IMG/VR virus record: IMGVR_UViG_3300044712_002668
Coordinates: 271,989 to 335,988 of that record
Direction: 5' to 3' (one strand)
Length of the DNA stretch: 64,000 nucleotides
Shown: positions 3 through 35,787 of the stretch, in pieces
How positions within the stretch are numbered: the first letter of the stretch is position 1
Layout: each line of letters begins with the position of its first letter
Position numbers and translations under genes: made by a program
Notes under the pieces: generated by a model
Database searches by the model: none
The model's input: only the letters and a program-made list of their open reading frames with translations
What the model was told of the DNA's origin: nothing

Positions 3-953
3 CTTGGTTCAACCAATGGTTATGGTCGTGGGTTTGAGCGGAATCGTGGGCGGGATTTCGAGAATGAATTGCCTACTGAACTAGAGTTCAAGAAGTATAA
101 TAAGCATCTTGAAATCAATGTTACTCACAACATCTATCACTTTCTGGAGGAGCGTTGTGAGATTTCAAAGCTTGATGAGATTTTCCATGGTCAGTATCTC
201 AAGGAGAAGGATCCTGATAATGACCGTAGTTGGATGAGTTTGATGGAGGAGTTTCCTCAGTGGCTCTGTGAGACTTTTCAGGAACCTTGTGAGGAATGTG
301 ATGGTTCTGAGAATGAGGATGAACCTTGTGAGTTCTGTAGTGGTACTGGCAAGGTTGGTTCCACTTATGGTGAGCCTGGTGGTATTTATGGTGAGGGTAA
401 GCCTATCTTCAATTATACTTACAATACCGATAACCTATTGAGTCAGAACATTCAGTATCTTTATTTCACTCTTGGCGGTAGGCATGACCGTGAAGAGTTT
501 GCTATCATTCAGATTCATAATGGTTGTGATGCCCGAGGTGGTATGACCACTCCTCATGTGTTTGAGGTTGGGCATTCTGGATCTGAGTATGACATTTTGG
601 AGGATAACCGAGCTACGATTTATTGTAGTGGTAAGAACCATCATCCTTCTGTGAAGGTAATTCCTGAGGAGCAGGAGAATCTTCCTGGTATTGATGTTGA
701 TCATAGTTGCCGTGGCAAGTATGGTCAGAATCGTTTTTGGGATATGGAGGGATACAATAGTTTCCCTGAGGGTGAGGACCACAAGGCTACTCACCTTGAA
801 GATTATGAAGTGAAGGTTTTGGATAGTAAGGAGGATCCGAATGCGGATAATCCCGAGCCTCATGTCTGGGAGGCTGGGAAGCTATGCATTGAGCATGAAA
901 CGGGGCTTGGATATTGTCCTTATTGCGGAGCAAGGTTGGAAGCCGGGCGTTAA
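3..953 (+). CDS. Hypothetical phage protein with Zn-binding CxxC pairs, 5'-truncated by window edge
   Basis: Frame open from base 3 into the 69..953 ORF; CEEC/CEFC and CPYC motifs. Confidence 0.7.
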   Translation, partial: LGSTNGYGRGFERNRGRDFENELPTELEFKKYNKHLEINVTHNIYHFLEERCEISKLDEIFHGQYLKEKDPDNDRSWMSLMEEFPQWLCETFQEPCEECDGSENEDEPCEFCSGTGKVGSTYGEPGGIYGEGKPIFNYTYNTDNLLSQNIQYLYFTLGGRHDREEFAIIQIHNGCDARGGMTTPHVFEVGHSGSEYDILEDNRATIYCSGKNHHPSVKVIPEEQENLPGIDVDHSCRGKYGQNRFWDMEGYNSFPEGEDHKATHLEDYEVKVLDSKEDPNADNPEPHVWEAGKLCIEHETGLGYCPYCGARLEAGR

Positions 954-1063
954 TCATCGCCTTCGTCTTCAAATCCTTCTTCCTCTGCTTCTCCTTCCTC
1001 TTCTTCGGAAGCTTTCTTAAGAAAAATATCAATCATCTCTTCTAGCTTAGCAAACTTTTCCAT
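950..1063 (-). CDS. 37-aa peptide MEKFAKLEEMIDIFLKKA plus poly-acidic tail (not in ORF track)
   Basis: Hand-translated; GAGGG SD upstream; N-terminus resembles MDKMAKLEKIVNNF of the 1306..1683 protein. Confidence 0.65.
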   Translation of the reverse strand: MEKFAKLEEMIDIFLKKASEEEEGEAEEEGFEDEGDD

Positions 1064-1089
1064 AAACCCTCTAAATAAAATAGTGGAAA

Positions 1090-1311
1090 ATGCCTGGACA
1101 GAAATTCAACTTTGGAGAAATCTTTAAAAAAGAATTTGAAAGGTTTGGTAAAGGCAAGAATAGATTTAGATTGATGAATGATTATTCGATAGGGGCGGGA
1201 CAAATGGACTCTGCCTTTGAATCAAAAGGCAAAGTAAAAGTAGAAACTCTGGAAAAGTTCTGTGAGTATCTTGGTTTGGAACTGGAAATTATTGTAAAGA
1301 GAAGATCATGA
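1090..1311 (+). CDS. Small XRE-like HTH DNA-binding protein
   Basis: IGAGQMDSAFESKG...VETLEKFCEYLGLEL pattern typical of Cro/XRE HTH. Confidence 0.55.
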   Translation: MPGQKFNFGEIFKKEFERFGKGKNRFRLMNDYSIGAGQMDSAFESKGKVKVETLEKFCEYLGLELEIIVKRRS

Positions 1312-1683
1312 ATCTTCATCCTCATCATACATTACATACTTATCATATAAGTTTTTAGCAATTGGATCTTCTAGATCAAATAATATTCCATCCTTTAGTT
1401 CTGGAACTATATTTGATGACCAATAATAGTGAGCTACTATATTTGAAAGGTAATTATGTTTTTCTTTATCACTTAAATCAAGTGAACTTATTTCTTGTTC
1501 TTTCTTGAAAAGAGCATCAATAATTATCTCTCTTAAATCTGAAAGGTTGTTTTTCAGATTATTACAAACTTTATCTAGAACGTGCATGGTTTTTTGAAGT
1601 TTCTCTTCAAGACCATGACTGCCTTTCTTAACAGTAAAGTAGAAGTTGTTGACAATTTTTTCCAGTTTAGCCATCTTATCCAT
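1306..1683 (-). CDS. Hypothetical protein with K-x-A-type N-terminal helix
   Basis: ORF; likely ATG at 1683 (MDKMAKLEK). Confidence 0.6.
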   Translation of the reverse strand: MDKMAKLEKIVNNFYFTVKKGSHGLEEKLQKTMHVLDKVCNNLKNNLSDLREIIIDALFKKEQEISSLDLSDKEKHNYLSNIVAHYYWSSNIVPELKDGILFDLEDPIAKNLYDKYVMYDEDEDS

Positions 1684-1745
1684 GTCTATATTTCTAAAAA
1701 TGCCTTGGATGGGATGACACATAAAAAACAAAAAGAGTTTGAGTC

Positions 1746-1967
1746 ATGAGCAAAGAAGACCTGATCGAGATCCGTGGCCGTATTATTGAAGCCCTTGGTG
1801 GTGGACAGTATTCAATCCAGGTGGATGGAAATGATACTGTTCTTCGTGCCAGATTGGGAGGCAAGATGAAGCAGAAACATATCAGGGTTATCCCTGGTGA
1901 CCTTGTTACTGTAGGCGTAAGCCCATATGATATGAGTCATGGTATTATTACTTGGCGTTTCAAGTAA
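1746..1967 (+). CDS. infA: Translation initiation factor IF-1
   Basis: MSKEDLIEIRG, GKMKQKHIRVIPGDLVTVGVSPYD and GIITWR match IF-1 over the full 73 aa. Confidence 0.95.
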   Translation: MSKEDLIEIRGRIIEALGGGQYSIQVDGNDTVLRARLGGKMKQKHIRVIPGDLVTVGVSPYDMSHGIITWRFK

Positions 1968-1978
1968 AGGTAAACACA

Positions 1979-2824
1979 ATGACCAACACCCAAGACATCC
2001 TCAGAATTTGTTCCAATGGTCCCAAGGTTGTTTTCAAGCCCGCCAAGGGTACAAAGCTTGGTGATTTTACTACCAAAACTTCTACACTGTATGGTGTAGA
2101 TAAGATTGTTGAAGCCTTCAAGGATTTCACCAAGGATAAGAATCCGGCAAAGTTTATCGGTAATATTTACGATGGCCGAGAGATTGTTGCCGTTGTTTCT
2201 TATAACGTCAAACAGGGAGTGATGATTTGTGATAAGGCACTTGAAACCCGCTATTGGTCTGAAACTGATGCTGTCATTGCTTCTGCCAAGCGTAATGAGT
2301 ATTACGCAAAGATAAAGCCCATCGTTACTCTTTATAATGAAACCTTCCTCAACTTTGTTTCAAATATTTATAACACTATGGTAATTGAAAATGTCAAGAC
2401 TGTTGTGGTTTTCAATTACCGTGAGAGTTTGATTGAGAGCTTTGAAGATTTGAAGAAGGCATTGTTTGATGGTGCAGATTTTGACAAGATCAATTCCACT
2501 GGAGTTTTGCTGAAGAATCCTTTTGTGATTGATGTTGGAAACAAGAGTGTGAATGTAAAGAAGAATAAGGGCATTCTTAGTTTCAGGTATGATGATTTCA
2601 CTGCCAGTGTGTCATTGTCTAATATCAAGATTGATACGGATGATGGGGCTGAGGTTTGGTTTGATTATGTAAAGAAGGTAGAGTTGATTCATGGTTATCT
2701 TTGCGAGGATAATCAGAATGATACTTCTACTGTGCTGAATGAGTTGAAGGCATTGTATGAGTCTTCCAAGGCTGAGATGTTGAAGATTCGTACTGAGCTT
2801 GGAGTAAAGACCCTCAATGACTGA
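1979..2824 (+). CDS. Hypothetical protein
   Basis: Long ORF, AAGG SD, genome-typical codon usage. Confidence 0.7.
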   Translation: MTNTQDILRICSNGPKVVFKPAKGTKLGDFTTKTSTLYGVDKIVEAFKDFTKDKNPAKFIGNIYDGREIVAVVSYNVKQGVMICDKALETRYWSETDAVIASAKRNEYYAKIKPIVTLYNETFLNFVSNIYNTMVIENVKTVVVFNYRESLIESFEDLKKALFDGADFDKINSTGVLLKNPFVIDVGNKSVNVKKNKGILSFRYDDFTASVSLSNIKIDTDDGAEVWFDYVKKVELIHGYLCEDNQNDTSTVLNELKALYESSKAEMLKIRTELGVKTLND

Positions 2825-3212
2825 TACCACAGAGGAAAGGCTTGACGATTATTGTAAGCGTATTGGATTGAAGATGAAGGTTGAATACATCGGACTAATA
2901 TCCGATGGATTGTTTTCCAAGAAGCATTATAAATGCAGGCTTGGTTTCAAGGGTAGGACTTTGACTACCGATTTTTATCAGGGTATGGGTTGCACAGAAG
3001 AACCGGTTATCCCTGATGTGATTTCAAGTTTGTGTTTGGATGCTTCTGCTGGAATGGAAGACTTTCCTTTTTTCTGTTCCAGCTTTGGATATGATACCGA
3101 TTCGATGAAGGCCAATAAGCTTTGGAAGGCATGCAAGGCTACCGTGCCCAAGTTGAAGAGGTTTCTTGGAGATGCATTCAATGAAACCTGTGAGAAGGGT
3201 AGTACTTGGTAA
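2817..3212 (+). CDS. Hypothetical phage protein
   Basis: Coupled ORF in operon. Confidence 0.7.
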   Translation: MTDTTEERLDDYCKRIGLKMKVEYIGLISDGLFSKKHYKCRLGFKGRTLTTDFYQGMGCTEEPVIPDVISSLCLDASAGMEDFPFFCSSFGYDTDSMKANKLWKACKATVPKLKRFLGDAFNETCEKGSTW

Positions 3213-3490
3213 TGGGACAGGATATTGATAACGCAAAACCAGGTGACATATTTGTAGCGGCTGATAATGGTATTTACGGTGTTATTGTATTGGCTGCTAA
3301 AAATAAAGTTGATGATGTAAATTTGTGTGCCTTTACATCCAAGGGTCCTGATATGAAAGGACCCTTTACCAATTACTTTATGGATGCATGGAAGCTTACT
3401 TATCGTTATAGAGTTCCTGATATAAAGGATTGGGATTGGATTCCTGAAAGTGTTAATGAATATGCTTGGGAAGTAAAAGAGAACTCGTAA
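3212..3490 (+). CDS. Hypothetical protein
   Basis: TAATG coupling. Confidence 0.6.
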   Translation: MGQDIDNAKPGDIFVAADNGIYGVIVLAAKNKVDDVNLCAFTSKGPDMKGPFTNYFMDAWKLTYRYRVPDIKDWDWIPESVNEYAWEVKENS

Positions 3491-3822
3491 TGTCAAGGCA
3501 ATATACACAAGAAGAGATTCGAGATAAGTTTATGACTCATGTTGCTGCTCTTGTCAGGTATTGGCAGCGGCAAGTTGATTGTTCTTCTGATGAGAAAGTT
3601 GAGGGTATTACCCATTCTCTTCTTGTAGCTCTGGATGGTGGAGCAATGGCTCTTCCGGCTTTCAAGGTCATTGCGGATCCGCATCCTGCTGATAAGCAAT
3701 ATCATATTGAACATGATGAAAATTGGTATCCTGAGAGTCATGAGTTGAATCATCCTGGTGATATTACGGCAGATGGACTTCTTCATGAGGTTCTGTTCAA
3801 GTACCTGAAGGATGACGAATGA
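3490..3822 (+). CDS. Hypothetical phage protein
   Basis: TAATG coupling. Confidence 0.7.
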   Translation: MSRQYTQEEIRDKFMTHVAALVRYWQRQVDCSSDEKVEGITHSLLVALDGGAMALPAFKVIADPHPADKQYHIEHDENWYPESHELNHPGDITADGLLHEVLFKYLKDDE

Positions 3823-4376: not shown

Positions 4377-4386
4377 TAGGTGAATA

Positions 4387-6732: not shown

Positions 6733-7170
6733 TTAGTCTTTTGGAATATCCTTTCTTGAAGCTGGCTGCATAAGGAGATTCCTTGCACTAACAGGGGTGG
6801 CTATATCAGCCATCCCTTGGTATGGTTGTCCATGCTCTCTCATTAAAAATAATGCCAGCCTTCTTAAATTAGCTCTATATCTTTTTATAACTTGATACTT
6901 CTCATTGATTTTATTTTGCAATTTATTTATTTCATCTCTCTTCAATCTTCGCATAAACTCTGATGTTTGAATAAGAAGTTCTTCATTAACTTTATCTATA
7001 TTATTTTGTAGATAAGATATCTCCTCTTCCATAAGTTTTATTTTATCTATTTGATATTCTACTTTATCTCTTATTGTTTCATCAAGCAAGTGAAGATGGG
7101 CCTTGATTTCCTCAATGGCTATCTTGATAATCTTCATATCGCGAGCAATTTTTACCAATACGTTTTTCAT
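6733..7170 (-). CDS. Coiled-coil protein with LVKIA/IIKIA N-terminal motif
   Basis: Likely start MKNVLVKIA at 7170. Confidence 0.6.
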   Translation of the reverse strand: MKNVLVKIARDMKIIKIAIEEIKAHLHLLDETIRDKVEYQIDKIKLMEEEISYLQNNIDKVNEELLIQTSEFMRRLKRDEINKLQNKINEKYQVIKRYRANLRRLALFLMREHGQPYQGMADIATPVSARNLLMQPASRKDIPKD

Positions 7171-7192
7171 ATTAGTATAAAAGAATATGACT

Positions 7193-9877: not shown

Positions 9878-10126
9878 ATGAAAGTTATAATTCTGAAAAA
9901 GAATGATTGGTATGGATCAGAGTATGGTTTTGGTGCTACCAGAGATTATATTTATGGTTTCGGTGCCACCAGAGATTATTTTCATGGCTGTGGTTATGGG
10001 GTTAGCGATGTGGATGGCGGTGGTTGGGGTGTTGGTGCTGGTTATGGAGGCGGTTGTGGTTTTGGAGATGGAGATGGTTATGGTGATATTAGATGGAAAA
10101 ATACAAAAGGTGTTTGCGAGTATTGA
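9878..10126 (+). CDS. Gly-rich MKV.IL family protein (cluster 1)
   Basis: MKVIILKKNDW plus GxG core; internal YGFGATRDY duplication. Confidence 0.7.
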   Translation: MKVIILKKNDWYGSEYGFGATRDYIYGFGATRDYFHGCGYGVSDVDGGGWGVGAGYGGGCGFGDGDGYGDIRWKNTKGVCEY

Positions 10127-13156: not shown

Positions 13157-13158
13157 AT

Positions 13159-15399: not shown

Positions 15400-16272
15400 A
15401 TGGCATCTCACTCCACTGGTAGCTTTGTAATTGGTTTCGGACCTCTCACGTGTATGGTAAAGACCTACGTTTCAGCATCACCAACTCGTATTGGGTTCAA
15501 GTGGATCAATAAGAAGACGGGTAATCTTGTTGGTCAGAAGAAGTTTGACAAGGTAACTAACGAGGAAGTTCAGCAAGCAGATATTATTAATGGATATGAA
15601 TATTCCAAGGATAAGTATCTACACTTTACTGATGTAGAGGTAGATAATATGCAGGCTACGAAGAAGGATACGATGGAGATTGCGGAGTTCGTTCCGATCA
15701 GTTCCATTGATCCGTTGCAGGTAGAGAAGACGTTTTACCTACAGCCTGATAAGGGTCAGGATGGTAATTACAAGTTGTTCTCTGTTGTTCTAGCCAAGTG
15801 TGGCAGGGCTGCTGTTGGTAAGTGGGTATCACGAGGCAAGGAACATCTTGTTGTGATTCGTGCTTATCAGCATGGAATTATTATGCACCAGATGTTCTAT
15901 CATAATGAGGTGCGTGGTTTTGAGGATAAGTGTTCTGCTGTTCCGCTCAATGAGAGGAACGTAAAGATTGCTGAGGAAATGATTTCTTATGGTTTGAGTG
16001 AGACGTTTGATTCCAAGAAGTATGCAGATATGTTTGTTGATAAGTTGAATGCTGCCGTGGCAAAGAAGTTGGCCAATCCTGATGAGCCGATTACTGCTGA
16101 TACCGGAGCTGCTTTGAAGGTTATTGATCAGGGCGATGCAATGCTCGCTTGGCTTGATGCAAAGCGTAAGGAGAAGGCCCAGCCTGTTGCCGAGCCTGTT
16201 GTTGAGAAGCCTGAGCCTCTCAAGTTGACCTCCAAGCCTGCCAAGAAGGCCAGGGCAAAGAAGGCTTCTTAA
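15400..16272 (+). CDS. ku: Ku DNA end-binding protein (NHEJ)
   Basis: IGFGPLT..VKTY, GYEYSKDKY, MEIAEFVP...IDP...KTFYLQP, RGKEHLV.IR; basic tail. Confidence 0.9.
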   Translation: MASHSTGSFVIGFGPLTCMVKTYVSASPTRIGFKWINKKTGNLVGQKKFDKVTNEEVQQADIINGYEYSKDKYLHFTDVEVDNMQATKKDTMEIAEFVPISSIDPLQVEKTFYLQPDKGQDGNYKLFSVVLAKCGRAAVGKWVSRGKEHLVVIRAYQHGIIMHQMFYHNEVRGFEDKCSAVPLNERNVKIAEEMISYGLSETFDSKKYADMFVDKLNAAVAKKLANPDEPITADTGAALKVIDQGDAMLAWLDAKRKEKAQPVAEPVVEKPEPLKLTSKPAKKARAKKAS

Positions 16273-17075
16273 AGATCCCACTCTTCTAGATCAGTAGGTA
16301 TCTCAGGTTTCTGTCCTTCTTGACTCATCATTTCTTCGTAATGAGCTCTTAACCCTCTAAGACCGTGTATTTTTACTCTTCTATTAGTAATACTTTCCAT
16401 AAGTAATTTTTTGTTATGTGCGGCTGCTTGAATAGCAATGCTATCTTTTTCTAGATAACCTTCCATTTTATCATGTCTTTTCCATTCTGCTTCATCTTCT
16501 AGATTCAATTGTCTTAGTTTATGTATGCGATTATCTATCTCTTCTATTTTCTTAGCCCAAATACTTGCTTGCTTTACAATAGATCTATATGTTTCGATGG
16601 CACCTGTGCTATTCATACCTGGATTACATTTGTAAGCTGGTGCTACTAATCTACCACCAGGCGTATAAATATCCCAATATACACCAGCAGTATCCATATA
16701 TCGGTTATATTTCTTGAAGCTAGTGTTTTTGGAAATAGCATCATTTCTTTGAATTGTTTCAACAAATCTTTGGTTTTCTGGAGTATTAACAAACCCCTGA
16801 TCAAGGATTTGTTTAATGTGATCATTGTCTATGTTACGTTTCTTATCAGAAGCACGTTCTGCGTTTAGTTCTTGCTGAGCCTTCTGTTGTTGAGCTTGTT
16901 GTTTAGCCTGCTGAAAAGTCTGAACTTGCTGTTGAGCCTGCTGAGTAGCTGGACCAATTTTTGGTTGCAAAGTTTTTGCTTGTTCCCATGGCCAAGCAGC
17001 TTGCTTTACAATAGATCTATACGTTTCGATGGCAACTTTCTTCGCGGCAGCTAATGCAATTTTCTTGGTGTTCAT
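16269..17075 (-). CDS. Hypothetical protein carrying two AIETYRSIVKQA motifs
   Basis: Internal DNA direct repeat (about 16567-16602 and 16998-17033); paralogous motif at 33431..33673. Confidence 0.7.
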   Translation of the reverse strand: MNTKKIALAAAKKVAIETYRSIVKQAAWPWEQAKTLQPKIGPATQQAQQQVQTFQQAKQQAQQQKAQQELNAERASDKKRNIDNDHIKQILDQGFVNTPENQRFVETIQRNDAISKNTSFKKYNRYMDTAGVYWDIYTPGGRLVAPAYKCNPGMNSTGAIETYRSIVKQASIWAKKIEEIDNRIHKLRQLNLEDEAEWKRHDKMEGYLEKDSIAIQAAAHNKKLLMESITNRRVKIHGLRGLRAHYEEMMSQEGQKPEIPTDLEEWDL

Positions 17076-19845: not shown

Positions 19846-20805
19846 CTATTTGATTTGATTATAAACATCTTTAAATAATCTTGCTATCTTTACAAGCTCA
19901 CTTATATGTGAGCTTTTTTTATTCTTACCAAACACACCAGAGATATACTTTTCTGCTTCTTGCAGGGTTTTCAATGGTTCCTTCCTTAATACGGATTCGT
20001 GTTTGGTTGCTTTACCATGAGCCTTTTCATAATTATCCCCATCATAAATCATATGTTCACACTCTATGATTTCATGAATGAGTATAGGGATGAGTTCTTT
20101 CTTTTCATAGTGTGATTCAATCCATATCGTATTGTTTGGTACATAGGAATACCTTCCAGGGTTTCCTCCCATAACAAAATCAGTATCAAACTTCTGACGT
20201 ACCAAATTACCATCTACAAGATTTACTTTATAACCGTATACTTCGCCAATTTCTTTTGTAACAACATCTTTATCAGAGATGTTTTTATGTTTTTTATATT
20301 TATCCATTCTCTTTTCTGGAGAATCTTTCTCTTTCCATAAAACAATTATACGTTTATCTACGGGTTTTTTATGGTTATCCTTTGGAAATGTAAACCATAT
20401 CGGAGCGAATTCTTTTTGTGTGATGATTTTATATTCACCAACTGAAGGATCCATTATCTCTATCTCTGTATCGTTGATGTCAGATACTACAGAATAATGA
20501 GAATCATCATTGCTAAACCACTCTACAATGATTTGATAATTCTCTTTCAATAATTTCTCTACTTCTTTAAAAGAAGAATTGTTTTTTATATAACCTTTAA
20601 GATTATATTTCTTGGCACCGCTTAAAAGATCTTCAGCTTCTATACCATGCTCTTCAGTGGCACCGATATTCTTGGCAATATCTTCCAACTCTTCATGGGT
20701 ATTATAGAAATGCAGGATGCTTTTCAGACATGCCGGTCCACAGAAACCTGGGGTCTGATCAATCGCTATAGGTTTTTTATAAAACTTTTCTTCAGCTTTC
20801 GTCAT
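19846..20805 (-). CDS. C39-family cysteine peptidase fused to an HExxE domain
   Basis: QTPGFCGPACL, SHYSVV, IMDP triad; C-terminal VDG..VR...HEIIEC domain paralogous to 27744..28280. Confidence 0.8.
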   Translation of the reverse strand: MTKAEEKFYKKPIAIDQTPGFCGPACLKSILHFYNTHEELEDIAKNIGATEEHGIEAEDLLSGAKKYNLKGYIKNNSSFKEVEKLLKENYQIIVEWFSNDDSHYSVVSDINDTEIEIMDPSVGEYKIITQKEFAPIWFTFPKDNHKKPVDKRIIVLWKEKDSPEKRMDKYKKHKNISDKDVVTKEIGEVYGYKVNLVDGNLVRQKFDTDFVMGGNPGRYSYVPNNTIWIESHYEKKELIPILIHEIIECEHMIYDGDNYEKAHGKATKHESVLRKEPLKTLQEAEKYISGVFGKNKKSSHISELVKIARLFKDVYNQIK

Positions 20806-23281: not shown

Positions 23282-23316
23282 AGTTCAATCAACCAACCAA
23301 CAAGGAAAAAAACAGC

Positions 23317-24429
23317 ATGTCAATCGCCAAGTCTCTGCTTCTTCGTGTCCTTTTCAATGGTGATGGAATCGTCAATTTTGATTCTCCGGATCAAAAGTAT
23401 CTTTGGAACAAGTTGGAGGGGGCAGGTTTTATCAGGCACAATAATACCATGGTTGGAAAGGCCAGGTATGAGTCAAAAAAGGTAACTCGTCAGAATCAGG
23501 ATAAAGAGGATTATGAGAAGGAGGTTTATACACGGGTTCCAATCAATTCTGCAGACTGCATTCGTCATACCATGTATGAAGATGTGATGCGAACGCATCT
23601 TCCCAATGTTCAGCATGATGATGATTGGTTGATTCGTACCATTGCAAACCCTGCTTTCATCCAGCGTGGGTATATGTTCCCCCGTGCCAACAAGGAATCT
23701 TGGAAGCGCAAGTCTTCATTGGCTTTCGGTTATGCCAAGGGTATTACGCCAAGTGTTCCGGCAATTGAAACGTTTTCAAATTCTCAAGAAAGGGATAATG
23801 TTGAGAAGAGCGAGAGTGGTTCTGAGACATCTTTCTTCTCTCGTGAGGTTCGAGGACAAGTAAATTATGAAATGACTGGAGTAATTGATTTGGCTGAGCT
23901 TGGGTTTATCTCCTTGAGTGATGTTCATGATCGTTTGGGATTCCATCCCGATCTTGATGGTGAGTTTATTGAGATGTTCAAGAAGCATTTCAAGTTTGAG
24001 GATACGATTACTTCTGGGTATTTTGTTCGTGAAGGTGATGCTTATGAGATTCCTGAGCAGGGTATTCTGCTTGGGGACAAGTATGTTATCGCCATGGTTG
24101 AGGATATCCTGAAGCGTTTGGCCAGGTTCAATTTGGTTCGTACCACTACTGGTTTTCTTCAGACTGCCAAGGTTGAGGTTATGGTTGTCAAGGATCCTTT
24201 GACTGACCGTGTTACCAATACTGATGGTTGGATTAATGTTTTTGATAATGGTAAGTTTTCTGTTGACTTTTTGAAGGGTCTCAAGATTGAGCGTGTTTAT
24301 AATGAGACCTCTATTGAGGAGGCTATTGAGAAGGTTCGGCATTATAAGGAACTGAAGAATGTTGATGAGCCGGTTGTGGAAGCCAAGCCCCCGAAGAAGC
24401 CGCGTGGCAAGAAAGAGGCGGCGGCATGA
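23317..24429 (+). CDS. cas7: Cas7 backbone subunit, type I-F2 (Cas7fv)-like
   Basis: G.GIVN, S.DCIRH, RGY, KR.S.L, TSFFS, L.FISL...DR, E.GILL, L.RLA, collinear with recalled Cas7fv motifs. Confidence 0.82.
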   Translation: MSIAKSLLLRVLFNGDGIVNFDSPDQKYLWNKLEGAGFIRHNNTMVGKARYESKKVTRQNQDKEDYEKEVYTRVPINSADCIRHTMYEDVMRTHLPNVQHDDDWLIRTIANPAFIQRGYMFPRANKESWKRKSSLAFGYAKGITPSVPAIETFSNSQERDNVEKSESGSETSFFSREVRGQVNYEMTGVIDLAELGFISLSDVHDRLGFHPDLDGEFIEMFKKHFKFEDTITSGYFVREGDAYEIPEQGILLGDKYVIAMVEDILKRLARFNLVRTTTGFLQTAKVEVMVVKDPLTDRVTNTDGWINVFDNGKFSVDFLKGLKIERVYNETSIEEAIEKVRHYKELKNVDEPVVEAKPPKKPRGKKEAAA

Positions 24430-25328
24430 GCAAGTATATTCTGCTTCTGGATTTTCAAAACGCAGGAATCTTTAAAAAGTATTGGCATAAAACAGAGCCT
24501 CGCTCTGCTTCCGGTGATGACCGTATTTTTGATGGAAAGAATTCCGATTATCGTCGTAAGGATCAATGGATTGAACCTTCTACGGTAACCTTTCATTATA
24601 GTTTTATTGAGAATGTTTTGAGAGTTCTTGCCGGGCGTAGACCCGTTCCTAAGTATCGCTCATCCTGTGTTGAACATGATGATGATATAATCAGGTTGGC
24701 TAAAAATAGTTATGTAAAAATTGATGCATTGGTCAGGCATTGGGAGGGGAAGCCTGACACATTTGCCACAGAGACCATGACAGTCAGGAAGGCGTCATGG
24801 AATGCATGGAATCAGGGTTGTATAGTTGGTTGGAAAAGGTTGGAGAATTTGTTGCCTGAGGATTTGTTCAATGAATTCTGTAGATTGGTTGAGAATATTT
24901 TTGGAATTGATTATTATAGAAAGGTTACGTTGAGTAAGGTTATTGAGAAGATTCATACGATGAAGAATGATAAGAGGATCATATCATTGTGTGACAGGGC
25001 GGTAGCCGTTTCGTGTACAAATTTCAAGCATCTATTGTTGGAAACTGGGCAGCCAACATTTTTTCAAGCCAGTTATAAGAAGTATGGGGATTCAACGGAA
25101 GCGAATGTTTGTATGAGAACCTTGACTGTGAAGGGAATTGCTGATGTAAGCAGATTGGATGGTATGATTGGAGTACCTGTAACGGCTGAAGAGTTGGAGA
25201 TGTTCCGCAAGGGTCGTGGATTTGCCACATTGTTTGATGGGGGTTTGGTAACTATAAACAAGGTTGTAGATTTGGAGTATTCAAACACTGGTGTAGTTTT
25301 GAATGGGTATACGCAAGCACTACAATGA
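24426..25328 (+). CDS. cas5: Large Cas5 subunit, Cas5fv-like with helical insertion
   Basis: 300 aa; IENVLRVLAG helix and C-terminal Gly loop ATLFDGGLV; lies between cas7 and cas6. Confidence 0.65.
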   Translation: MSKYILLLDFQNAGIFKKYWHKTEPRSASGDDRIFDGKNSDYRRKDQWIEPSTVTFHYSFIENVLRVLAGRRPVPKYRSSCVEHDDDIIRLAKNSYVKIDALVRHWEGKPDTFATETMTVRKASWNAWNQGCIVGWKRLENLLPEDLFNEFCRLVENIFGIDYYRKVTLSKVIEKIHTMKNDKRIISLCDRAVAVSCTNFKHLLLETGQPTFFQASYKKYGDSTEANVCMRTLTVKGIADVSRLDGMIGVPVTAEELEMFRKGRGFATLFDGGLVTINKVVDLEYSNTGVVLNGYTQALQ

Positions 25329-25846
25329 ACCTGTATAAAATCCACAAGGCATTTGCGAATCCTTATCAGAACCACCAGGCATTGAAGAACTTGTTTCTGG
25401 GAGAGGGGCGGGTTCTTTTCCAGAACTTGGGTTCTTCTTTATTGGTGCTTTCTCAAATAAAGTTGAGCGATGAATACCGGAATAACTTTTTGATTGATTT
25501 TCTTGATATTGATAATTGTTTGAATGGTGACATTATGAATTTTTCTATCAGGTTGAATGCTTGCAAGGGCAGTCAGGGCAAGCGATATACGTTGAAGGAG
25601 GATGAATTTGAGAGGTGGGTTGATTGGAAGATGGGACAAGCTGGAGTTTCATTGGTTAAGAAGAGCATTCATAATGAGGGAGTTATTGTTAGTGACAGGC
25701 AGGGTGGGCATTGTTATCATGCTTCATTGTTTGTATCTGGTATATTGAAGGTTGAGGATAGGGTTTTGTTCAGCAAATCGGTTGAGCTTGGCATTGGACA
25801 TGGCAAAGCTTTCGGGTTCGGGTTGTTGAATGTGTTTACGTGTTAG
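25325..25846 (+). CDS. cas6: Cas6 endoribonuclease, Cas6e-like
   Basis: NPYQNHQAL, F.IRLNA.K, C-terminal GIGHGKAFGFGLL G-loop. Confidence 0.88.
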   Translation: MNLYKIHKAFANPYQNHQALKNLFLGEGRVLFQNLGSSLLVLSQIKLSDEYRNNFLIDFLDIDNCLNGDIMNFSIRLNACKGSQGKRYTLKEDEFERWVDWKMGQAGVSLVKKSIHNEGVIVSDRQGGHCYHASLFVSGILKVEDRVLFSKSVELGIGHGKAFGFGLLNVFTC

Positions 25847-25847
25847 A

Positions 25848-27473
25848 GTTCTCTACTGGTTTTTGTAGGGATTGAAATAAATCTGTCGCTCAGCGCTCCT
25901 TTGCCTCGTTGAATTGAATTCCCTACTATATTATGTAGGGGTTGAAATGAGCAATTGGCCATAGCTTTCAGGGAACAATACGATCATTGAATTCCCTACT
26001 ATATTATGTAGGGGTTGAAATCCCCCAACGACCTGGAGTTTTTACAGATCCAATTAAATTCCCTACTATATGTAGGGATTGAAACCGAATCAGGATATGT
26101 CGTCGTGGTTGTGTATCGGTATAATTGAATTCCCTATTATATAGGGATTGAAAAGTCGCATTCGAAGTCAAGACCGCTATTGGTAAAGTATTCCTACTAT
26201 ATGTAGGGATTGAAACACCCTGCGTTGGGCCCGAAAGAGACCGGCGGTTGTCCGATTGAATTTCCTACTGTATGTAGGGATTGAAATATAGGAGGCTCCC
26301 TCGGGGATGTGTCAGTGCGAACATTGAATTCCCTGCTATGTGTAGGGATTGAAATGATGTGGTCGGTGCCATATTCCTACCGCGTGACTGAATTTCCTAC
26401 TGTATGTAGGGATTGAAACTCCGTTGGTTCCCGCGAGATGGTTATCGTGGAGGTATTGATTCCCTATTATATAGGGATTGAAATAACGTTTTTGAAGGTC
26501 CGTCGCGTATAGCTTAGTTTAGTTTCCTACTATATGTAGGGATTGAAACGTGCGTATGACATAGAAGTGTGTTGCCGTGATGGTTCCCTGCTGTATGTAG
26601 GGATTGAAATCTTAGTTTCACCGGAATTCAGGTGATGACATTTATTTCCCTGCTTTATGTAGGGATTGAAATGCGAGCAGTCTAAATTCTTCGGCAGTCA
26701 GTTTGGAGTCGGTTTTCCTACCAAGGTAGGGATTGAAATGGTGGACATAACCAGAATAGTCGTGGACTTGTAGTTAATCCCTAATAAAATAGGGGTTGAA
26801 ATGTAGTTGGCGGATTTAAAGGAGACCAACTAAATCTCCCTACAATATGTAGGGGTTGAAACTTTCTCTCTTTTCCGCGTCCATCAGTCTTTATGATTCC
26901 CCGCTATATGCAGGGATTGAAATCCGCAACCACCGTTTAGTCCTGCTAACATTACGTAGTTCTCCGCTATATGCGGAGGTTGAAACCCTACTCCGTCTTT
27001 CAGTGACGCTACCGTTTTTATTCCCTATTTATGTAGGGGTTGAAATAAGGATGGATCCAATCATTGGGATGTTCTATTGTCTCCCTATTTATGTAGGGAT
27101 TGAAACAGCGGAAGAACTCAATCTTTCCAAGTTTGATTGATAGTTTCCCTACTAAATATAGGGATTGAAATGCTATTTATGATATGATTCAGCGTGTCAA
27201 AATAGTTTTCCTACTGTAGTGTAGGGATTGAAACTCCACTGCATCTAGTACAGCGAATGATTCTTAATGTCCCTGCTAATAAGCAGGGGTTGAAACTACC
27301 CTGATAGACTGCCTTCTATTGATTATGATGATTCCCTACAATATGTAGGGATTGAAATCGTCAGGCTATTGATGAGAATGCCATTGTTCAATGTCCCTGC
27401 TGATGTAGGGGTTGAAATCAAAGCACGCCTTCGGGCAGTACAATTAGAATCATCTCCCTACACCATGTAGGGA
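25848..27473 (+). CRISPR. CRISPR array, 26 degenerate repeats and 25 spacers; consensus (ATTGAA)TTCCCTACTATATGTAGGGATTGAAAY
   Basis: Hairpin plus RTTGAAA recurring every 60-73 nt from 25877 to 27417; last repeat lacks the handle. Confidence 0.95.
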
Positions 27474-27486
27474 CTCGGAGAATACA

Positions 27487-28280: not shown

Positions 28281-28294
28281 CAAATGGTATCAAA

Positions 28295-28621: not shown

Positions 28622-28622
28622 T

Positions 28623-29018: not shown

Positions 29019-29027
29019 GGTAAACAT

Positions 29028-31872: not shown

Positions 31873-31875
31873 TAA

Positions 31876-32109
31876 ATGAAAGTCTTGATTCTTAATAAAG
31901 AAGATTGGCAGATACCCGAACATTGTCCGGTTAATACTGTTGCAACATATGCTAGAACGAGTGATGGGGCTGGTGCTTGTAGTAACGATATGGCCACGGG
32001 TTATGGGGGTGGTTGTACTCGTTCTTTTCCACATAGGAATAATGATGGATTCGGAAGTGTAGTAGGTAATGGTTATGGCGATGGTAGAGGGTATGGTTTT
32101 CCTATATGA
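31876..32109 (+). CDS. Gly-rich MKV.IL family protein (cluster 2)
   Basis: MKVLILNKEDWQIPE. Confidence 0.7.
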   Translation: MKVLILNKEDWQIPEHCPVNTVATYARTSDGAGACSNDMATGYGGGCTRSFPHRNNDGFGSVVGNGYGDGRGYGFPI

Positions 32110-32354
32110 AAGTCCTTATCCTTAAAAAGGAACATTGGCAGATACCTGAAAAGTGTCCGGTTAATTTTATTGCTGCTTTTGAACGTTATACTGGTGGGGG
32201 TGGTCGAGCAGGTGGATGTTGCCCAGGAGGTGTAGGTTGGGGAGGAGGTTGCAATTGTGGCGATTCACCACATATTAATTTTGGATTTGGAGATATGGTA
32301 GGTAGTGGGCGTGGTGATGGTAGGGGGCACGGTAATTGTAAGGTAATTATATGA
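32106..32354 (+). CDS. Gly-rich MKV.IL family protein (cluster 2)
   Basis: MKVLILKKEHWQIPE. Confidence 0.7.
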   Translation: MKVLILKKEHWQIPEKCPVNFIAAFERYTGGGGRAGGCCPGGVGWGGGCNCGDSPHINFGFGDMVGSGRGDGRGHGNCKVII

Positions 32355-32587
32355 AGGTATTAATTCTTGATAAAGAAGATTGGCAAACACCTGAGGATAC
32401 CGGTAGAGGATCCTATCCTAAAATGTTTAAAGATATGGAACTAGGAAGAGGAAATGGTGAAGGTTTAGGTGGCGGATCTGGTTGTTATACCAGAAGTATG
32501 GGTTGTGGTTTTTATGGTTATGGACAAGTATGCGGTCAGGGTAATGGTAATGGTACGGGCAGCGGAATACATATAAGGACATACTAA
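32351..32587 (+). CDS. Gly-rich MKV.IL family protein (cluster 2)
   Basis: MKVLILDKEDWQTPE. Confidence 0.7.
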   Translation: MKVLILDKEDWQTPEDTGRGSYPKMFKDMELGRGNGEGLGGGSGCYTRSMGCGFYGYGQVCGQGNGNGTGSGIHIRTY

Positions 32588-33438
32588 TGAAACTACTTTG
32601 GATAACAGATTCTCATTTTGATTTTGTACCTGGCAAAGCTGGCATGTTAGGTAAATACATGGCAGCAGATTATCCGGATACGGATGGTTTATTGATTACT
32701 GGAGATATCTCTAACGGTAATTATGGCAAAAGAGATTTGAAAGATATCTCTGTAGCATTGGGTAAGCCTGTTTATTTTATAAACGGAAACCATGACTACT
32801 ACCATTCCTCTTTTGAGCGTACAGATAAGAGATCAAGGGACGCTGTTAAAGAGGTTGCAGAGCATGTAAAAACTACACCATCAAATGCTAGCTTGCATTT
32901 TCTTGATGATGGATTTGTAAAGATTGATGATAACACTGTAATAGCCGGAAATTCCAACTGGTATGATTGCCGTCATGGCAATGTCTTTGGTACGCCAGTG
33001 GATCTTACAGATTTCCAGGTCAATAAAGACCTAAGACAATACGCTTTCAGGGAGCAAAAGATTGATGCTTCCAAAGCTTATGCAGATAAAAAAGCATCTC
33101 AAATGTTCGAGATGCTTTCAAGTATTCCTGATGATATTTCCAGGATTATTTTGTTGCTTCATGTGCCGCCATATCCTCAAGCGGCTTGGCATCAAGGTCA
33201 ACCTTCAAATTCAGATTGGCAACCTTGGATGGTTTCCAAAGTATCAGGAGAAAAACTGCTCGACTTTCGTGAGCAGTTTCCTGATAAGAAGTTGTTGGTC
33301 CTTTGTGGTCATACCCATTCTTCTGGTTATTTCAAAGTTGATGATAACCTTGAAATATATACTGGCAAAGCAGTATATGGTAGCCCAAAGGAATGTGGGA
33401 TTTTAGATACAGATAAATGGGAAGTTACGTTTATTTAA
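32587..33438 (+). CDS. Calcineurin-like metallophosphoesterase
   Basis: TDSH, TGDIS, GNHDYY, H.PP, CGHTH motifs. Confidence 0.88.
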   Translation: MKLLWITDSHFDFVPGKAGMLGKYMAADYPDTDGLLITGDISNGNYGKRDLKDISVALGKPVYFINGNHDYYHSSFERTDKRSRDAVKEVAEHVKTTPSNASLHFLDDGFVKIDDNTVIAGNSNWYDCRHGNVFGTPVDLTDFQVNKDLRQYAFREQKIDASKAYADKKASQMFEMLSSIPDDISRIILLLHVPPYPQAAWHQGQPSNSDWQPWMVSKVSGEKLLDFREQFPDKKLLVLCGHTHSSGYFKVDDNLEIYTGKAVYGSPKECGILDTDKWEVTFI

Positions 33439-33673
33439 CGTAAACAACATACCATTTATTGTTGGCAACATAGTATTCTGCTTTGCCGTCTTGACCTTTG
33501 CCTTTTGCTTCCGCTCCGGCTGGAAGTAAAAATCTATTGGCAACAACTATAGCGCGTTCCCAGTTCTCTCCTGTTTGGGCGCTATCATCAGCTTGCTTCA
33601 TAATAGCACGATATGTTTCAATAGCAGCTTGTTTAGCCGCAGCCTTTGCAATCTTTTTGATATCCTGTTTCAT
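33431..33673 (-). CDS. Small protein with KKIA...AIETYRAIMKQA leader motif
   Basis: Paralogous to N-terminus of 16269..17075. Confidence 0.65.
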   Translation of the reverse strand: MKQDIKKIAKAAAKQAAIETYRAIMKQADDSAQTGENWERAIVVANRFLLPAGAEAKGKGQDGKAEYYVANNKWYVVYVK

Positions 33674-33705
33674 ACTTTCTATACAAACATAATGGCAGGA
33701 TCGCT

Positions 33706-34437
33706 ATGAAAAATTTCATGCTGGCCCAGTATTATGATTGGTCATTCGATCCTAAAGGATGGTTTATGTCCGAAAAACTTAATGGGCATAGGGCTGTTTT
33801 CAATAAACACTTCATAAAACGTGGTAATACAATCGTTACTCCCCCATCATGGTTTATGAAGGATTTTCCTGATGTAACCCTTGATGGTGAAATATATGCA
33901 GGAAGAGGCAATCTTCGTTTGGTTCAATCCCTTGGCCCAAGAGAACTTGATTGGAAAAATATAGTCTTTGCTGTTTTTGACGCCCCGGAATACCAAGGCC
34001 CCTTCAAAACAAGGTACTCATATATCTCTAATCTTCTAAAAAATAGACAGTATATACTTACCGTTCCTCATGTCATTTGCGAAGGCAAGGATGACCTACA
34101 GGAGCGTTTGGATGCCGTTATCGATATCAAGGGTGAAGGGTTGATGCTCCGTCATCCTGACTCATTGTACGAGCATAAACGTAGTAATAAACTTCTTAAG
34201 GTAAAGAAGTGGTATTATGATACGGCTGTAATTATTGGGCATCTTGAAAAGAATAGACCTGGGATGATTGGTTCTTTTCTATGCCGGGATGATAACGGGT
34301 ATGAATTCAAGGTAACGGGATTGAATGATGCGTTGGCAAGCAATCCATATCCAATTGGAACAAGATTGGAGTATAGGTATTATGAGAAGAATAAGGGAAA
34401 GCCAAAGCCTGCCACATTATTCAGGGTTATAAATTGA
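33706..34437 (+). CDS. Minimal ATP-dependent DNA ligase
   Basis: SEKLNGHRA (KxxG), LDGEIY, FAVFD, EGLMLR, RS..LLKVK; OB fold. Confidence 0.88.
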   Translation: MKNFMLAQYYDWSFDPKGWFMSEKLNGHRAVFNKHFIKRGNTIVTPPSWFMKDFPDVTLDGEIYAGRGNLRLVQSLGPRELDWKNIVFAVFDAPEYQGPFKTRYSYISNLLKNRQYILTVPHVICEGKDDLQERLDAVIDIKGEGLMLRHPDSLYEHKRSNKLLKVKKWYYDTAVIIGHLEKNRPGMIGSFLCRDDNGYEFKVTGLNDALASNPYPIGTRLEYRYYEKNKGKPKPATLFRVIN

Positions 34438-34443
34438 CATTTA

Positions 34444-34683
34444 ATGGTGGCACACTGGACTCTTAAATACAAGTTTCTAACAGACAATCCTGTTACAGAA
34501 CATCACGATTGTAGCTTCGATGATTTTTGTTATATCTTAAGGGCCAAGTATGTAGAAACAAATGACTATGTACTTGGAATGAGCGATAAACATTATCTAT
34601 GGATTGACAGTCCAAGTTTGACTATATTCGTTTCAGAGAATATAGATGAAAAACCAATAGAGATTGTGGTAGATGAATGTTGA
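34444..34683 (+). CDS. Hypothetical protein
   Basis: ORF. Confidence 0.5.
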   Translation: MVAHWTLKYKFLTDNPVTEHHDCSFDDFCYILRAKYVETNDYVLGMSDKHYLWIDSPSLTIFVSENIDEKPIEIVVDEC

Positions 34684-34962
34684 TTATTCTCTAACTTTGG
34701 CATTGAATAATCTACCCAACCATGAAGCATGTTGGTGTTCTTTTTCGAGATATATCTCGCCTATTCTTTGTATGATTTGATAGCGATCAGAGGCACCAAG
34801 ATTCAATAGATGATGGTGTATAGTGGGCCAGGAATGGCTCGCTAATTGTTTTGCTAGGGTTTCATTATCAATTGTCTTTGGCATAGCCTTACTCTCTGCA
34901 AAAGAACAGAGAGAATAGTATTTATTAGCCGCTATAATGATATTATCAGGTGAATAGGCCAT
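34684..34962 (-). CDS. Hypothetical protein (minus-strand mini-operon)
   Basis: GAGG SD; N-terminal IIIAANKYY helix. Confidence 0.6.
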   Translation of the reverse strand: MAYSPDNIIIAANKYYSLCSFAESKAMPKTIDNETLAKQLASHSWPTIHHHLLNLGASDRYQIIQRIGEIYLEKEHQHASWLGRLFNAKVRE

Positions 34963-34963
34963 A

Positions 34964-35188
34964 TCAACCTCTGCTTAAAGCTTCTTCAAACAAAGAAGCT
35001 AACCTTACGATCTCATCAATACTAAACCCTAGACGCTCTGCGCGGGCTTTTTTCTTGGGCTTTTTCTTCTTTTTGACCCTTTCAGGCAGGGCTTTGATGT
35101 TAGGGGTTTCGTGAGCCCATTCTTTTGCCATTTCAGGCTTGAACTTGAACATCCATTTCTGTTGTTTTTTCGATTTGAAGGGGGACAT
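34964..35188 (-). CDS. Small basic phage protein (PFKSK.QQ.WMF...PE.A..W type)
   Basis: Recognised phage motif; C-terminal IVRLASLF helix. Confidence 0.65.
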   Translation of the reverse strand: MSPFKSKKQQKWMFKFKPEMAKEWAHETPNIKALPERVKKKKKPKKKARAERLGFSIDEIVRLASLFEEALSRG

Positions 35189-35787
35189 TATTTTCCTGGG
35201 GTAATATATTCAATAGCAAGTTCAATATTTTTTATAAGATGGGTTATTTTGTTTTGTTGTTCTATACTTCTAAGCTCACCTTTAAGTTGCTTGGCTGATC
35301 TGAGACCGCTTTGCAGGGTATGGTGTAATAATTTTATGTTTGGCTTGAAAGAAGGAGGTTCTGATACCGGACTTGGCTTGACTTCTACATGAGGTTTGCT
35401 TTCTACTGGTAGTATAGCTGGTTTATGAGCTATTTCTGTCTGTAATTGATGCAAACTTCTCATGGTAGGGCTTTCTCTGGCTGTCCAGGTATTTACTGAT
35501 TGAGGTTCAACATAAGGTGGCATAGGCGGCCTATGCTCTCTATGTGTTACGGGCTCTTCCGCCTCTTCTAAACCAAGCTCATGGGGGTGAACCGGGGTAT
35601 AGGACTGTTCCGGGGAGGTATCCAATCCCTCAAAACCACTGGGCCTACCATACTGACGGTATTGATCTCTTATTGCTCTGCGCAAATGAGGGTGAATCTC
35701 ATCCCAAGATACAGTTCCTTCTGTACGTCTGGGATCTTGTGTGCTTTTTTTATAAACTTCAGCAAATTTTAATATGTCAGCCCTCAT
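35188..35787 (-). CDS. Pro-rich hypothetical protein
   Basis: GAGG SD; TAATG coupling; MRADILKFAEVY start. Confidence 0.65.
   Translation of the reverse strand: MRADILKFAEVYKKSTQDPRRTEGTVSWDEIHPHLRRAIRDQYRQYGRPSGFEGLDTSPEQSYTPVHPHELGLEEAEEPVTHREHRPPMPPYVEPQSVNTWTARESPTMRSLHQLQTEIAHKPAILPVESKPHVEVKPSPVSEPPSFKPNIKLLHHTLQSGLRSAKQLKGELRSIEQQNKITHLIKNIELAIEYITPGK

What the first reader, a model, noticed from the sequence alone, without database searches (positions are those of the whole stretch)
950..35787. Scattered, mostly minus-strand genes share a short K-x-A amphipathic helix: candidate head-targeting or maturation signal
Seen: unrelated proteins carry similar helices. N-terminal examples: MEKFAKLEEMIDIFLKKA (950-1063), MDKMAKLEKIVNNFY (1683), MKNVLVKIARDMKIIKIA (7170), KKIA...AIETYRSIVKQA (twice in 16269-17075, once in 33431-33673), MRADILKFAEVYKK (35787), IIIAANKYY (34962), IEAIENIVSMYCIAA (27744). 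C-terminal examples: ELVKIARLF (19846) and IVRLASLF (34964). The 37-aa peptide is only motif plus acidic tail. Established: T4 and phiKZ-like phages load internal head proteins through short sequences removed by the prohead protease. Inference: a portable packaging tag cleaved after K-x-A, marking proteins ejected into the host.
Basis: partly seen in the sequence, partly recalled or inferred. Interest (0 to 1): 0.62.

Follow-up and report, generated by a model that had tools for sequence, protein, structure and literature searches.

The report
Portable N-terminal leader in a megaphage
A phage-G-like giant phage puts the same ~26-residue basic helix, always ending in Lys-x-Ala, on the front of many unrelated small proteins; it is most likely a tag that loads them into the head and is then cut off, but nothing has yet shown cleavage or loading.

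Summary
Two of the ten listed proteins (window 16269-17075 and 33431-33673, both minus strand) carry a real conserved N-terminal leader of about 26 residues. It runs from KKIA to a terminal K-x-A.

- **Copies:** the 336-kb genome has six N-terminal copies and one internal half copy. One copy lies inside the head module.
- **Distribution:** a profile search of 1.84 billion proteins found 16 carriers. Their downstream parts fall into at least 11 unrelated families.
- **Boundary:** identity among the six genome copies is 76% inside the leader and 8% in the next 20 residues.
- **Selection:** synonymous codon differences outnumber non-synonymous ones, so the peptide itself is under selection.
- **Structure:** AlphaFold places a low-confidence linker at the K-x-A boundary, followed by different folds.
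- **Motif:** hydrophobic-hydrophobic-K-x-A is about 4.5-fold enriched in head-module proteins only. It is conserved near the scaffold C-terminus and in the capsid protein's N-terminal extension.
- **Protease:** the prohead protease is fused to the scaffold, as in herpesviruses, whose proteases cut after Ala.

A second small family (window 950-1063 and 1306-1683, plus one gene outside the window) is probably real. The remaining examples are at chance level. Cleavage, virion location and ejection are untested.

The parts
16998..17075 (-). Leader (aa 1-26) of the 268-aa protein P0003, ending in K-Q-A
   Evidence: HMM 80.6 bits, E 2.9e-23. Alignments A4 and A6. Coordinates.
16269..16997 (-). Cargo part of P0003: a Gln-rich stretch, then the internal half leader, then a coiled-coil-like C-terminus. 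No known family.
   Evidence: No Pfam, PHROG or NCBIfam hit. No homologue in five related genomes.
16566..16601 (-). Internal half copy of the leader (aa 159-170, ending K-Q-A then Ser). A possible second cleavage site.
   Evidence: 52 bits, E 2.2e-14. Its DNA differs at 1 of 35 bases from the N-terminal copy in the same gene. Coordinates.
33590..33673 (-). Leader (aa 1-28) of the 80-aa protein P0004, ending in K-Q-A
   Evidence: 78 bits, E 1.7e-22. AF2 gives a helix at 3-31 with pLDDT about 52 and a linker at 27-36 with pLDDT below 50.
33431..33589 (-). Cargo of P0004: a small beta domain (aa 40-80, pLDDT 80-86). An ortholog, P0011, exists in another metagenomic phage.
   Evidence: The whole protein scores 24-26 bits on Pfam HK97-gp10_like, cut-off 21.4. 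Foldseek against PDB finds nothing at E<=0.001.
950..1063 (-). 37-aa ORF: an 18-residue N-terminal motif of the second family, ending F-L-K-K-A, followed by an acidic tail
   Evidence: 46 bits in its own genome.
1306..1683 (-). 125-aa protein whose N-terminus belongs to the second family. The ending is degenerate (V-K-K-G).
   Evidence: 52.7 bits.
6733..7170 (-). Coiled-coil protein with two loose pattern matches near its N-terminus. Not a family member; chance level.
   Evidence: No partner in the all-against-all N-terminal BLAST. No genome-wide excess outside the head module.
35188..35787 (-). 199-aa protein with I-L-K-F-A at residues 5-9. A single pattern match; chance level.
19846..20805 (-). 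Protein with an N-terminal Peptidase_C39 domain.
   Evidence: Pfam PF03412, E 5.5e-16. BLAST does not pair its C-terminus with that of 34964-35188 at E<=1.
34964..35188 (-). 74-aa basic protein.

Best explanation
The window is the last 64 kb of a 336-kb record of an uncultured megaphage. Its capsid protein is 54% identical to that of Bacillus phage G.

The phage and a few close relatives carry a portable N-terminal module of about 26 residues. Its consensus is M-x-N-L-KKIA-x-x-AAK-x-AA-IETY-R/K-S-IM-K-x-A, a basic Ala-rich helix. The module is attached through a flexible linker to many unrelated small proteins.

My best reading is that this is a capsid-targeting propeptide. The helix would dock the cargo onto the scaffold or core of the assembling prohead. 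The HK97/assemblin-type prohead protease would then remove it by cutting after the Ala of hydrophobic-hydrophobic-K-x-A. Here that protease is the N-terminal domain of a 1171-aa protease-scaffold fusion. The same site would process the scaffold C-terminus and the capsid protein's N-terminal extension.

Shown: the module exists, it is modular, its boundary is sharp, the peptide is under selection, one copy lies in the head module, and the pentapeptide is enriched in head proteins.

Inferred: docking, cleavage, and residence in or ejection from the virion.
For: Modularity:
- Six N-terminal copies and one internal copy in this genome, and two in a syntenic relative.
- 16 carriers among 1.84 billion representative proteins.
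- Cargo parts fall into at least 11 families. BLAST links only the orthologs, and the best hhalign probability between families is 2.2%.

Boundary and selection:
- Among the six copies in this genome, identity is 76% in the leader and 8% in the next 20 residues. The codon comparison gives 133 synonymous and 84 non-synonymous differences.
- The 17-sequence alignment loses all conservation right after K-x-A.

Structure:
- AF2 models of two carriers give a helix ending at the boundary, then a linker with pLDDT below 50, then confident but different folds: beta in one, all-alpha in the other.

Link to the head:
- One copy lies between the protease-scaffold gene and the next head genes.
- The relative G001 has two tandem copies at that position.
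- G002 and G005 have a diverged tandem form at the same place.

Cleavage motif:
- 15 sites in 7,902 head-module residues against 3.2 +/- 1.9 expected; 0 of 500 shuffles reach 15. Nine control motifs are not enriched, and the rest of the genome is at expectation.
- Replicated in G001 (14 against 4.2) and in seven more distant head loci (33 against 11.0 summed).
- K-x-A followed by Ser is conserved near the scaffold C-terminus in nine relatives, while the residues before it vary.
- The capsid protein has a 41-residue N-terminal extension that phage G lacks. In it K-[YF]-A is invariant across 74 relatives.

Protease:
- PHROG head maturation protease, E 5e-16; NCBIfam prohead protease fusion, E 1.9e-9.

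Precedent:
- The fused layout mirrors herpesvirus UL26, with its release and maturation sites and an Ala as the C-terminal residue of the released protease (PMC4498786).
- SPN3US paralogs share an identical N-terminal 15 residues within their processed propeptides (PMC5694885).
Against: - No proteomic, structural or genetic data show cleavage or virion residence.
- I wrote the pentapeptide pattern and chose the head-module limits after seeing the data.
- A 9-residue matrix built from the leader ends does not pick out head proteins: 2 of the top 25 hits against 1.9 expected.
- Conservation of individual head-module sites between G000 and G001 is mixed.
- The whole capsid N-terminal extension is conserved, so K-[YF]-A is not singled out.
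- Phage G has no leader and no head-module enrichment: 3 against 0.9.
- Five of the six carriers lie far from the head module. In the window they sit next to Ku and DNA ligase genes.
- P0004 scores just above the Pfam cut-off for a neck/tail family.
- The complex prediction could not be run.
Confidence: 0.45

Rival explanations
1. The leader is a docking helix for some other shared partner and is not a head-loading propeptide. With its +4/+5 charge, the partner could be DNA or RNA, a membrane surface, a chaperone or a phage compartment. It need not be cleaved.
For: - The helix is strongly basic and Ala-rich.
- Five of the six carriers are scattered among replication and repair genes such as Ku, ligase and phosphoesterase.
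- The extended leader matrix shows no affinity to head proteins.
Against: - The conserved position of a copy inside the head module in four genomes.
- The sharp K-x-A ending matches a pentapeptide enriched only in head proteins.
- No partner has been identified.
Confidence: 0.25
2. The carriers are fast-diverging paralogs of one structural family, for example the HK97-gp10-like neck/tail proteins. The leader is simply the best-conserved first helix of that fold.
For: - P0004 scores 24.1 and 26.5 bits on PF04883, cut-off 21.4, over its whole length.
- The language-model search places the P0005 cargo near gp10-like, Minor_capsid_2 and YomN clusters at 0.83-0.85, which is only a lead.
Against: - Neither half of P0004 alone gives the Pfam hit, and no other carrier matches.
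- The two cargo folds modelled differ: beta in one, all-alpha in the other. The leader is not packed against them.
- No solved neck or tail structure appears among the Foldseek hits.
- hhalign finds no cargo-to-cargo similarity.
- 76% against 8% identity across a single boundary is not a paralog-like gradient.
- An internal half copy exists.
Confidence: 0.08
3. The leader is an N-terminal degradation or regulatory tag, recognised by a Clp-type or other protease or adaptor, that times the lifetime of accessory proteins.
For: - It is an N-terminal, portable, basic module on unrelated small proteins.
- Phage G encodes ClpP and ClpX (PMC12484599).
Against: - I did not search this genome for Clp genes.
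- This reading does not explain the head-module copy or the head-specific pentapeptide enrichment.
Confidence: 0.07
4. The leader is a RiPP or bacteriocin-type leader peptide processed by the C39 peptidase-domain protein encoded in the window.
For: - A Peptidase_C39 domain protein lies at 19846-20805.
- Many precursors share one leader and have variable downstream parts.
Against: - There is no Gly at position -2. The ending is K-x-A, with x being Q, M, L, A, I or S.
- Cargos are 50-240 residues and fold into domains.
- The peptidase is not fused to an ABC exporter.
- One copy sits in the head module.
Confidence: 0.03

Closest known systems
T4 capsid targeting sequence (CTS) of the internal proteins IPI, IPII, IPIII and Alt, removed by prohead protease gp21
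   Same: A short N-terminal tag on unrelated proteins, with its end coinciding with the protease motif. That motif is also used in capsid and scaffold proteins. (Own knowledge; T4 processing is summarised in PMC5694885.)
   Different: The T4 tag is about 10 residues and ends in L/I-x-E. This one is about 26 residues, basic, far better conserved, and ends in K-x-A. Here neither targeting nor cleavage has been shown.
Propeptides of phiKZ-like giant phages, for example SPN3US gp53 and gp54
   Same: These paralogs share an identical N-terminal 15 residues while the rest has diverged. Many head proteins are cut at one motif, and the protease cuts itself (PMC5694885).
   Different: Their motif is A/S/G-x-E, with cleavage after Glu. 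The proteins are paralogs rather than unrelated cargos. Those phages belong to a different lineage from phage G relatives.
Herpesvirus UL26 protease-scaffold (assemblin) with its release and maturation sites
   Same: An N-terminal protease domain is fused in frame to the scaffold. One site lies near the scaffold C-terminus, next to the presumed capsid-binding tail. The P1 residue is Ala and the next residue is Ser (layout and terminal Ala from PMC4498786; the consensus hydrophobic-x-A then S is from my own knowledge).
   Different: The phage motif has an invariant Lys at P3. In herpesviruses the hydrophobic residue sits at P3 and a polar or basic one at P2. No portable cargo leaders are known in herpesviruses.
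Encapsulin cargo-loading peptides
   Same: A short portable peptide loads unrelated cargo into an HK97-fold shell (own knowledge).
   Different: Those peptides are usually C-terminal, are not cleaved, and bind the shell protein directly.
Pfam HK97-gp10_like (PF04883)
   Same: P0004 scores just above the family cut-off.
   Different: No other carrier matches, and the fold search gives no support.

Membership tests
Capsid-targeting propeptide removed by a prohead protease (T4 CTS or phiKZ type) | The same N-terminal peptide sits on several otherwise unrelated proteins of one phage | tested here: met
   Six copies in G000 and 16 carriers overall. The cargos fall into at least 11 unrelated families.
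Capsid-targeting propeptide removed by a prohead protease (T4 CTS or phiKZ type) | The genome encodes a prohead maturation protease | tested here: met
   phrog_18299, E 5e-16, at aa 113-217 of the 1171-aa fusion. NF045541, E 1.9e-9.
Capsid-targeting propeptide removed by a prohead protease (T4 CTS or phiKZ type) | The tag ends at the protease's cleavage motif, which recurs in capsid, scaffold and other head proteins | tested here: inconclusive
   The pentapeptide is enriched in head modules and conserved in the scaffold and capsid protein. The pattern was defined after seeing the data, and the 9-mer matrix shows no enrichment. No cleavage data exist.
Capsid-targeting propeptide removed by a prohead protease (T4 CTS or phiKZ type) | Cleavage after Glu (L/I-x-E or A/S/G-x-E) | tested here: not met
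   All leaders end in K-x-A, or rarely G or N.
Capsid-targeting propeptide removed by a prohead protease (T4 CTS or phiKZ type) | Carriers are found in heads with the tag removed | not testable with these tools
   The phage is uncultured and no proteome is available.
HK97-gp10_like (PF04883) | Score above the Pfam gathering threshold | tested here: met
   Met for P0004 only, at 24.1 and 26.5 bits against 21.4. The other carriers have no hit.
HK97-gp10_like (PF04883) | Fold like that of solved neck or tail-completion proteins | tested here: inconclusive
   The AF2 model has a mean pLDDT of 67. Foldseek against PDB gives no match at E<=0.001 and no neck protein among its hits.
Herpesvirus-type protease-scaffold fusion | The protease domain is N-terminal and in frame with the scaffold | tested here: met
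   One ORF of 1171 aa, with orthologs of 1108-1276 aa in eight relatives.
Herpesvirus-type protease-scaffold fusion | Cleavage after Ala near the scaffold C-terminus | not testable with these tools
   Only the conserved K-x-A followed by S is seen.
Double-glycine leader cleaved by a C39 peptidase | Gly at position -2 and Gly, Ala or Ser at -1 | tested here: not met
   Position -2 is Q, M, L, A, I or S.

The most novel reading that the evidence does not exclude
Phage-G-like megaphages have a programmable head-loading system. A 26-residue basic leader would be sufficient to load any protein into the prohead. An assemblin-like protease that cuts after Ala in hydrophobic-hydrophobic-K-x-A would then remove it. 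If so, the leader marks from sequence alone the set of internal, probably ejected, proteins of uncultured giant phages.
Probability: 0.35. Interest if true: 0.72.

Novelty: new variant of a known kind. Interest (0 to 1): 0.56.

Why it matters
Internal and ejected head proteins of giant phages are hard to recognise from sequence. Where they are known, in T4 and phiKZ-like phages, they are key to host takeover and anti-defence.

A conserved leader would let such proteins be listed directly from metagenomes of phage-G-like megaphages. It would point to a prohead protease with Ala specificity at P1, a parallel with herpesvirus assemblin. It would also offer a simple tag for loading foreign proteins into very large capsids.

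If the leader instead docks to another hub, it still defines a lineage-specific protein-sorting signal in a clade with hundreds of environmental members.

Tried and rejected
- **Amphipathic helix:** the hydrophobic moment is not above that of shuffles.
- **Recent DNA duplication:** rejected. Synonymous sites are heavily diverged and the upstream DNA is not conserved. The exception is the intragenic pair in P0003.
- **Shared promoter:** no common upstream motif appeared. Only ribosome-binding-site k-mers and a weak GATATAT stand out.
- **Leaderless cargo homologues:** none in five relatives, and the word-index searches found only the window's own proteins. Modularity therefore rests on the unrelated cargos alone.
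- **Wider scans:** `search for related loci` with the short leader alignment failed its tblastn confirmation. A degenerate DNA pattern found one IMG/VR contig and no JGI metagenome contig.
- **Solved structures and folds:** the PDB sequence search with the protease domain gave nothing useful. The Foldseek searches with both cargo models gave nothing significant.
- **Leader matrix:** a 9-residue matrix of the leader ends showed no head enrichment.
- **Complex prediction:** There is no result either way.
- **Phage G paper:** the phage G capsid paper with mass spectrometry (J Mol Biol 2020) is not held.
Full report
**What the window is.** The window is bases 271989-335988 of a 335,988-bp virus record that CheckV rates 78% complete. 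Two of its leader-bearing proteins also lie on a 454,833-bp contig. The head module sits at about 23-49 kb of the record:
- large terminase and portal
- a 1171-aa protein whose residues 113-217 match a head maturation protease (phrog_18299, E 5e-16, NF045541, E 1.9e-9)
- a 336-aa major capsid protein (phrog_2522, E 1.3e-77)

The closest cultured relative is Bacillus phage G, whose capsid protein gp27 is 54% identical. The clade is large. At least 252 IMG/VR contigs matched the capsid protein; the best 80 are 79-91% identical, and several of them are 390-452 kb long.

**Checking the observation.** All quoted peptides are present, but they are heterogeneous. A six-frame scan of the whole genome and a profile search show that two of the listed proteins share a true N-terminal module. 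These are window 16269-17075(-), here P0003, and window 33431-33673(-), here P0004. Four genes outside the window share it too, at genome 37171, 179908, 210934 and 240538. P0003 also has an internal half copy at window 16566-16601. The module runs from KKIA to a terminal K-x-A.

**The boundary is sharp.** Among the six genome copies, identity is 76% inside the module and 8% in the next 20 residues. There are 133 synonymous and 84 non-synonymous codon differences, and upstream DNA is not conserved. This is old duplication with selection on the peptide, not recent copying. Remainders show no pairwise similarity.

**Distribution.**
- A degenerate DNA pattern finds one other IMG/VR contig, G001 (218 kb), and nothing in JGI metagenome contigs. 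G001 is syntenic and carries two tandem carriers.
- A profile search of 1.84 billion representative proteins finds 16 carriers, ten of them new.
- In the 17-sequence alignment, conservation stops exactly after K-x-A.
- The cargo parts fall into at least 11 families. BLAST links only orthologous pairs, and the best hhalign probability between families is 2.2%.
- Complete or near-complete relatives G003 and G004, the 62%-complete G006, and phage G lack the module.
- G002 and G005 have a diverged tandem version in one head-module protein.

**Architecture.** AlphaFold models of two carriers with their orthologs give the same picture. A helix ends at the boundary. A linker with pLDDT below 50 follows. 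Then comes a confident domain: beta in P0004 (pLDDT 80-86) and all-alpha in P0006 (83-92). The different folds and the unpacked helix argue against a single diverged paralog family. Foldseek finds no solved relative for either model. The helix has a net charge of +4 to +5 and is not amphipathic by hydrophobic moment.

**Link to head assembly.** One carrier (genome 37171-37449) lies between the protease-scaffold gene with its acidic neighbour and the next conserved head genes. G001 has its two carriers at the same place.

The pentapeptide hydrophobic-hydrophobic-K-x-A behaves as follows:
- It occurs 15 times in the 24 head-module proteins (7,902 residues) against 3.2 +/- 1.9 in per-protein shuffles. 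None of 500 shuffles reaches 15.
- Nine control patterns are not enriched.
- The rest of the genome, without the carriers, is at expectation: 33 against 26.9.
- The excess repeats in G001 (14 against 4.2) and, summed over seven more distant head loci, is 33 against 11.0.
- Near the scaffold C-terminus, K-x-A followed by Ser (Gly in one relative) is kept in nine relatives while the preceding residues vary. Further conserved sites lie along the scaffold.
- The capsid protein has a 41-residue N-terminal extension absent from phage G gp27. In it K-[YF]-A is invariant in 74 relatives.

The protease-scaffold fusion resembles herpesvirus UL26, which has a release site and a maturation site. The released herpesvirus protease ends in Ala (PMC4498786). 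That herpesvirus proteases cut between Ala and Ser is from my own knowledge. Giant phages of the phiKZ group process many head proteins at one motif, and two SPN3US paralogs share an identical N-terminal 15 residues within their processed propeptides (PMC5694885).

**Cautions.**
- I chose the pentapeptide pattern and the head-module limits after seeing the data.
- A 9-residue matrix from the leader ends does not enrich for head proteins.
- Site conservation between G000 and G001 is mixed.
- The whole capsid extension is conserved, not just the site.
- Phage G shows no head-module enrichment.
- P0004 scores just over the cut-off of Pfam HK97-gp10_like. Neither half alone gives that hit, and no other carrier matches.

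**Second family and the rest.**
- Window 950-1063(-), window 1306-1683(-) and genome 219809(+) share an N-terminal M-x-K-F-A-K-L-E start. Three of the four six-frame matches sit at residue 3-4 of an ORF. Two end in F-[LF]-K-K-A. The family is confined to this genome.
- G003, which lacks the main leader, has one pair of unrelated proteins sharing an N-terminal helix that ends in T-K-L-A. This is a lead only.
- The other listed peptides, including both C-terminal ones, are at chance level.

**Verdict.** A real, lineage-restricted, portable N-terminal leader ending in K-x-A is shown. Its role as a head-loading propeptide cut by the prohead protease is the best-supported reading (about 0.45) but rests on inference. 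It is a new variant of a known kind of system.

Noticed in passing
window 20846-27480: A compact phage-borne type I CRISPR-Cas locus. It comprises a Cas3-like HD-helicase (20846-23281), a Cas7/DevR-like protein (23317-24429), an unassigned 300-aa protein (24426-25328), a Cas6e-type protein (25325-25846) and an array. The array spans about 25840-27480 and has roughly 25 degenerate repeats containing GTAGGGATTGAAA, spaced 60-73 bp apart.
   Followed up: partly
window 15400-16272 (+) and 33706-34437 (+): A Ku beta-barrel protein (Pfam E 1.5e-33) and an ATP-dependent DNA ligase are present, which suggests a phage-encoded end-joining pair. Each lies directly beside one of the two leader-bearing genes. 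A metallophosphoesterase sits at 32587-33438.
   Followed up: no
G001 (IMGVR_UViG_3300037851_000671), about 33.9-36.1 kb: In this relative the major capsid gene is interrupted after the ANPIR motif by about 1.1 kb. The insert encodes a LAGLIDADG-like homing endonuclease and looks like an intron. G000 has the uninterrupted gene.
   Followed up: no
window 9878-10126, 32106-32587 and about 43.0-44.7 kb; also genome 235-251 kb: A large paralog family of at least 15 small proteins of 70-100 aa. Each starts with M-K-V-L-I-L-D/N-K-x-D-W and continues as a Gly-rich G-x-G repeat. Function unknown.
   Followed up: no
genome 211472-211765 (-); window 54825-55295, 56326-56787, 57187-57696 (+): Four proteins share the N-terminus M-K-x-R-x-G-F-V-S-N-S-S-S. 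Three of them also share C-terminal similarity, so these are ordinary paralogs.
   Followed up: no
genome 219809-220354 (+), outside the window: The third member of the second N-terminal family carries an H-E-W-G-H motif and may be a small zinc metallopeptidase-like protein. Pfam and NCBIfam give no significant hit.
   Followed up: partly
window 19846-20805 (-): A stand-alone Peptidase_C39 domain protein with no ABC transporter part. Its C-terminal half contains an H-E-I-I-E-C-E-H stretch. Its substrate is unknown.
   Followed up: partly
L024 (phage G, NC_023719) gp19 and gp21: The phage G prohead protease gp19 has L-L-K-I-A followed by S, 24 residues before its C-terminus. The scaffold-like gp21 has A-K-S-A followed by P-R-S-L-G-G, aligned with the clade's conserved scaffold site. 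Both are candidate sites that could be checked in published virion proteomes.
   Followed up: partly
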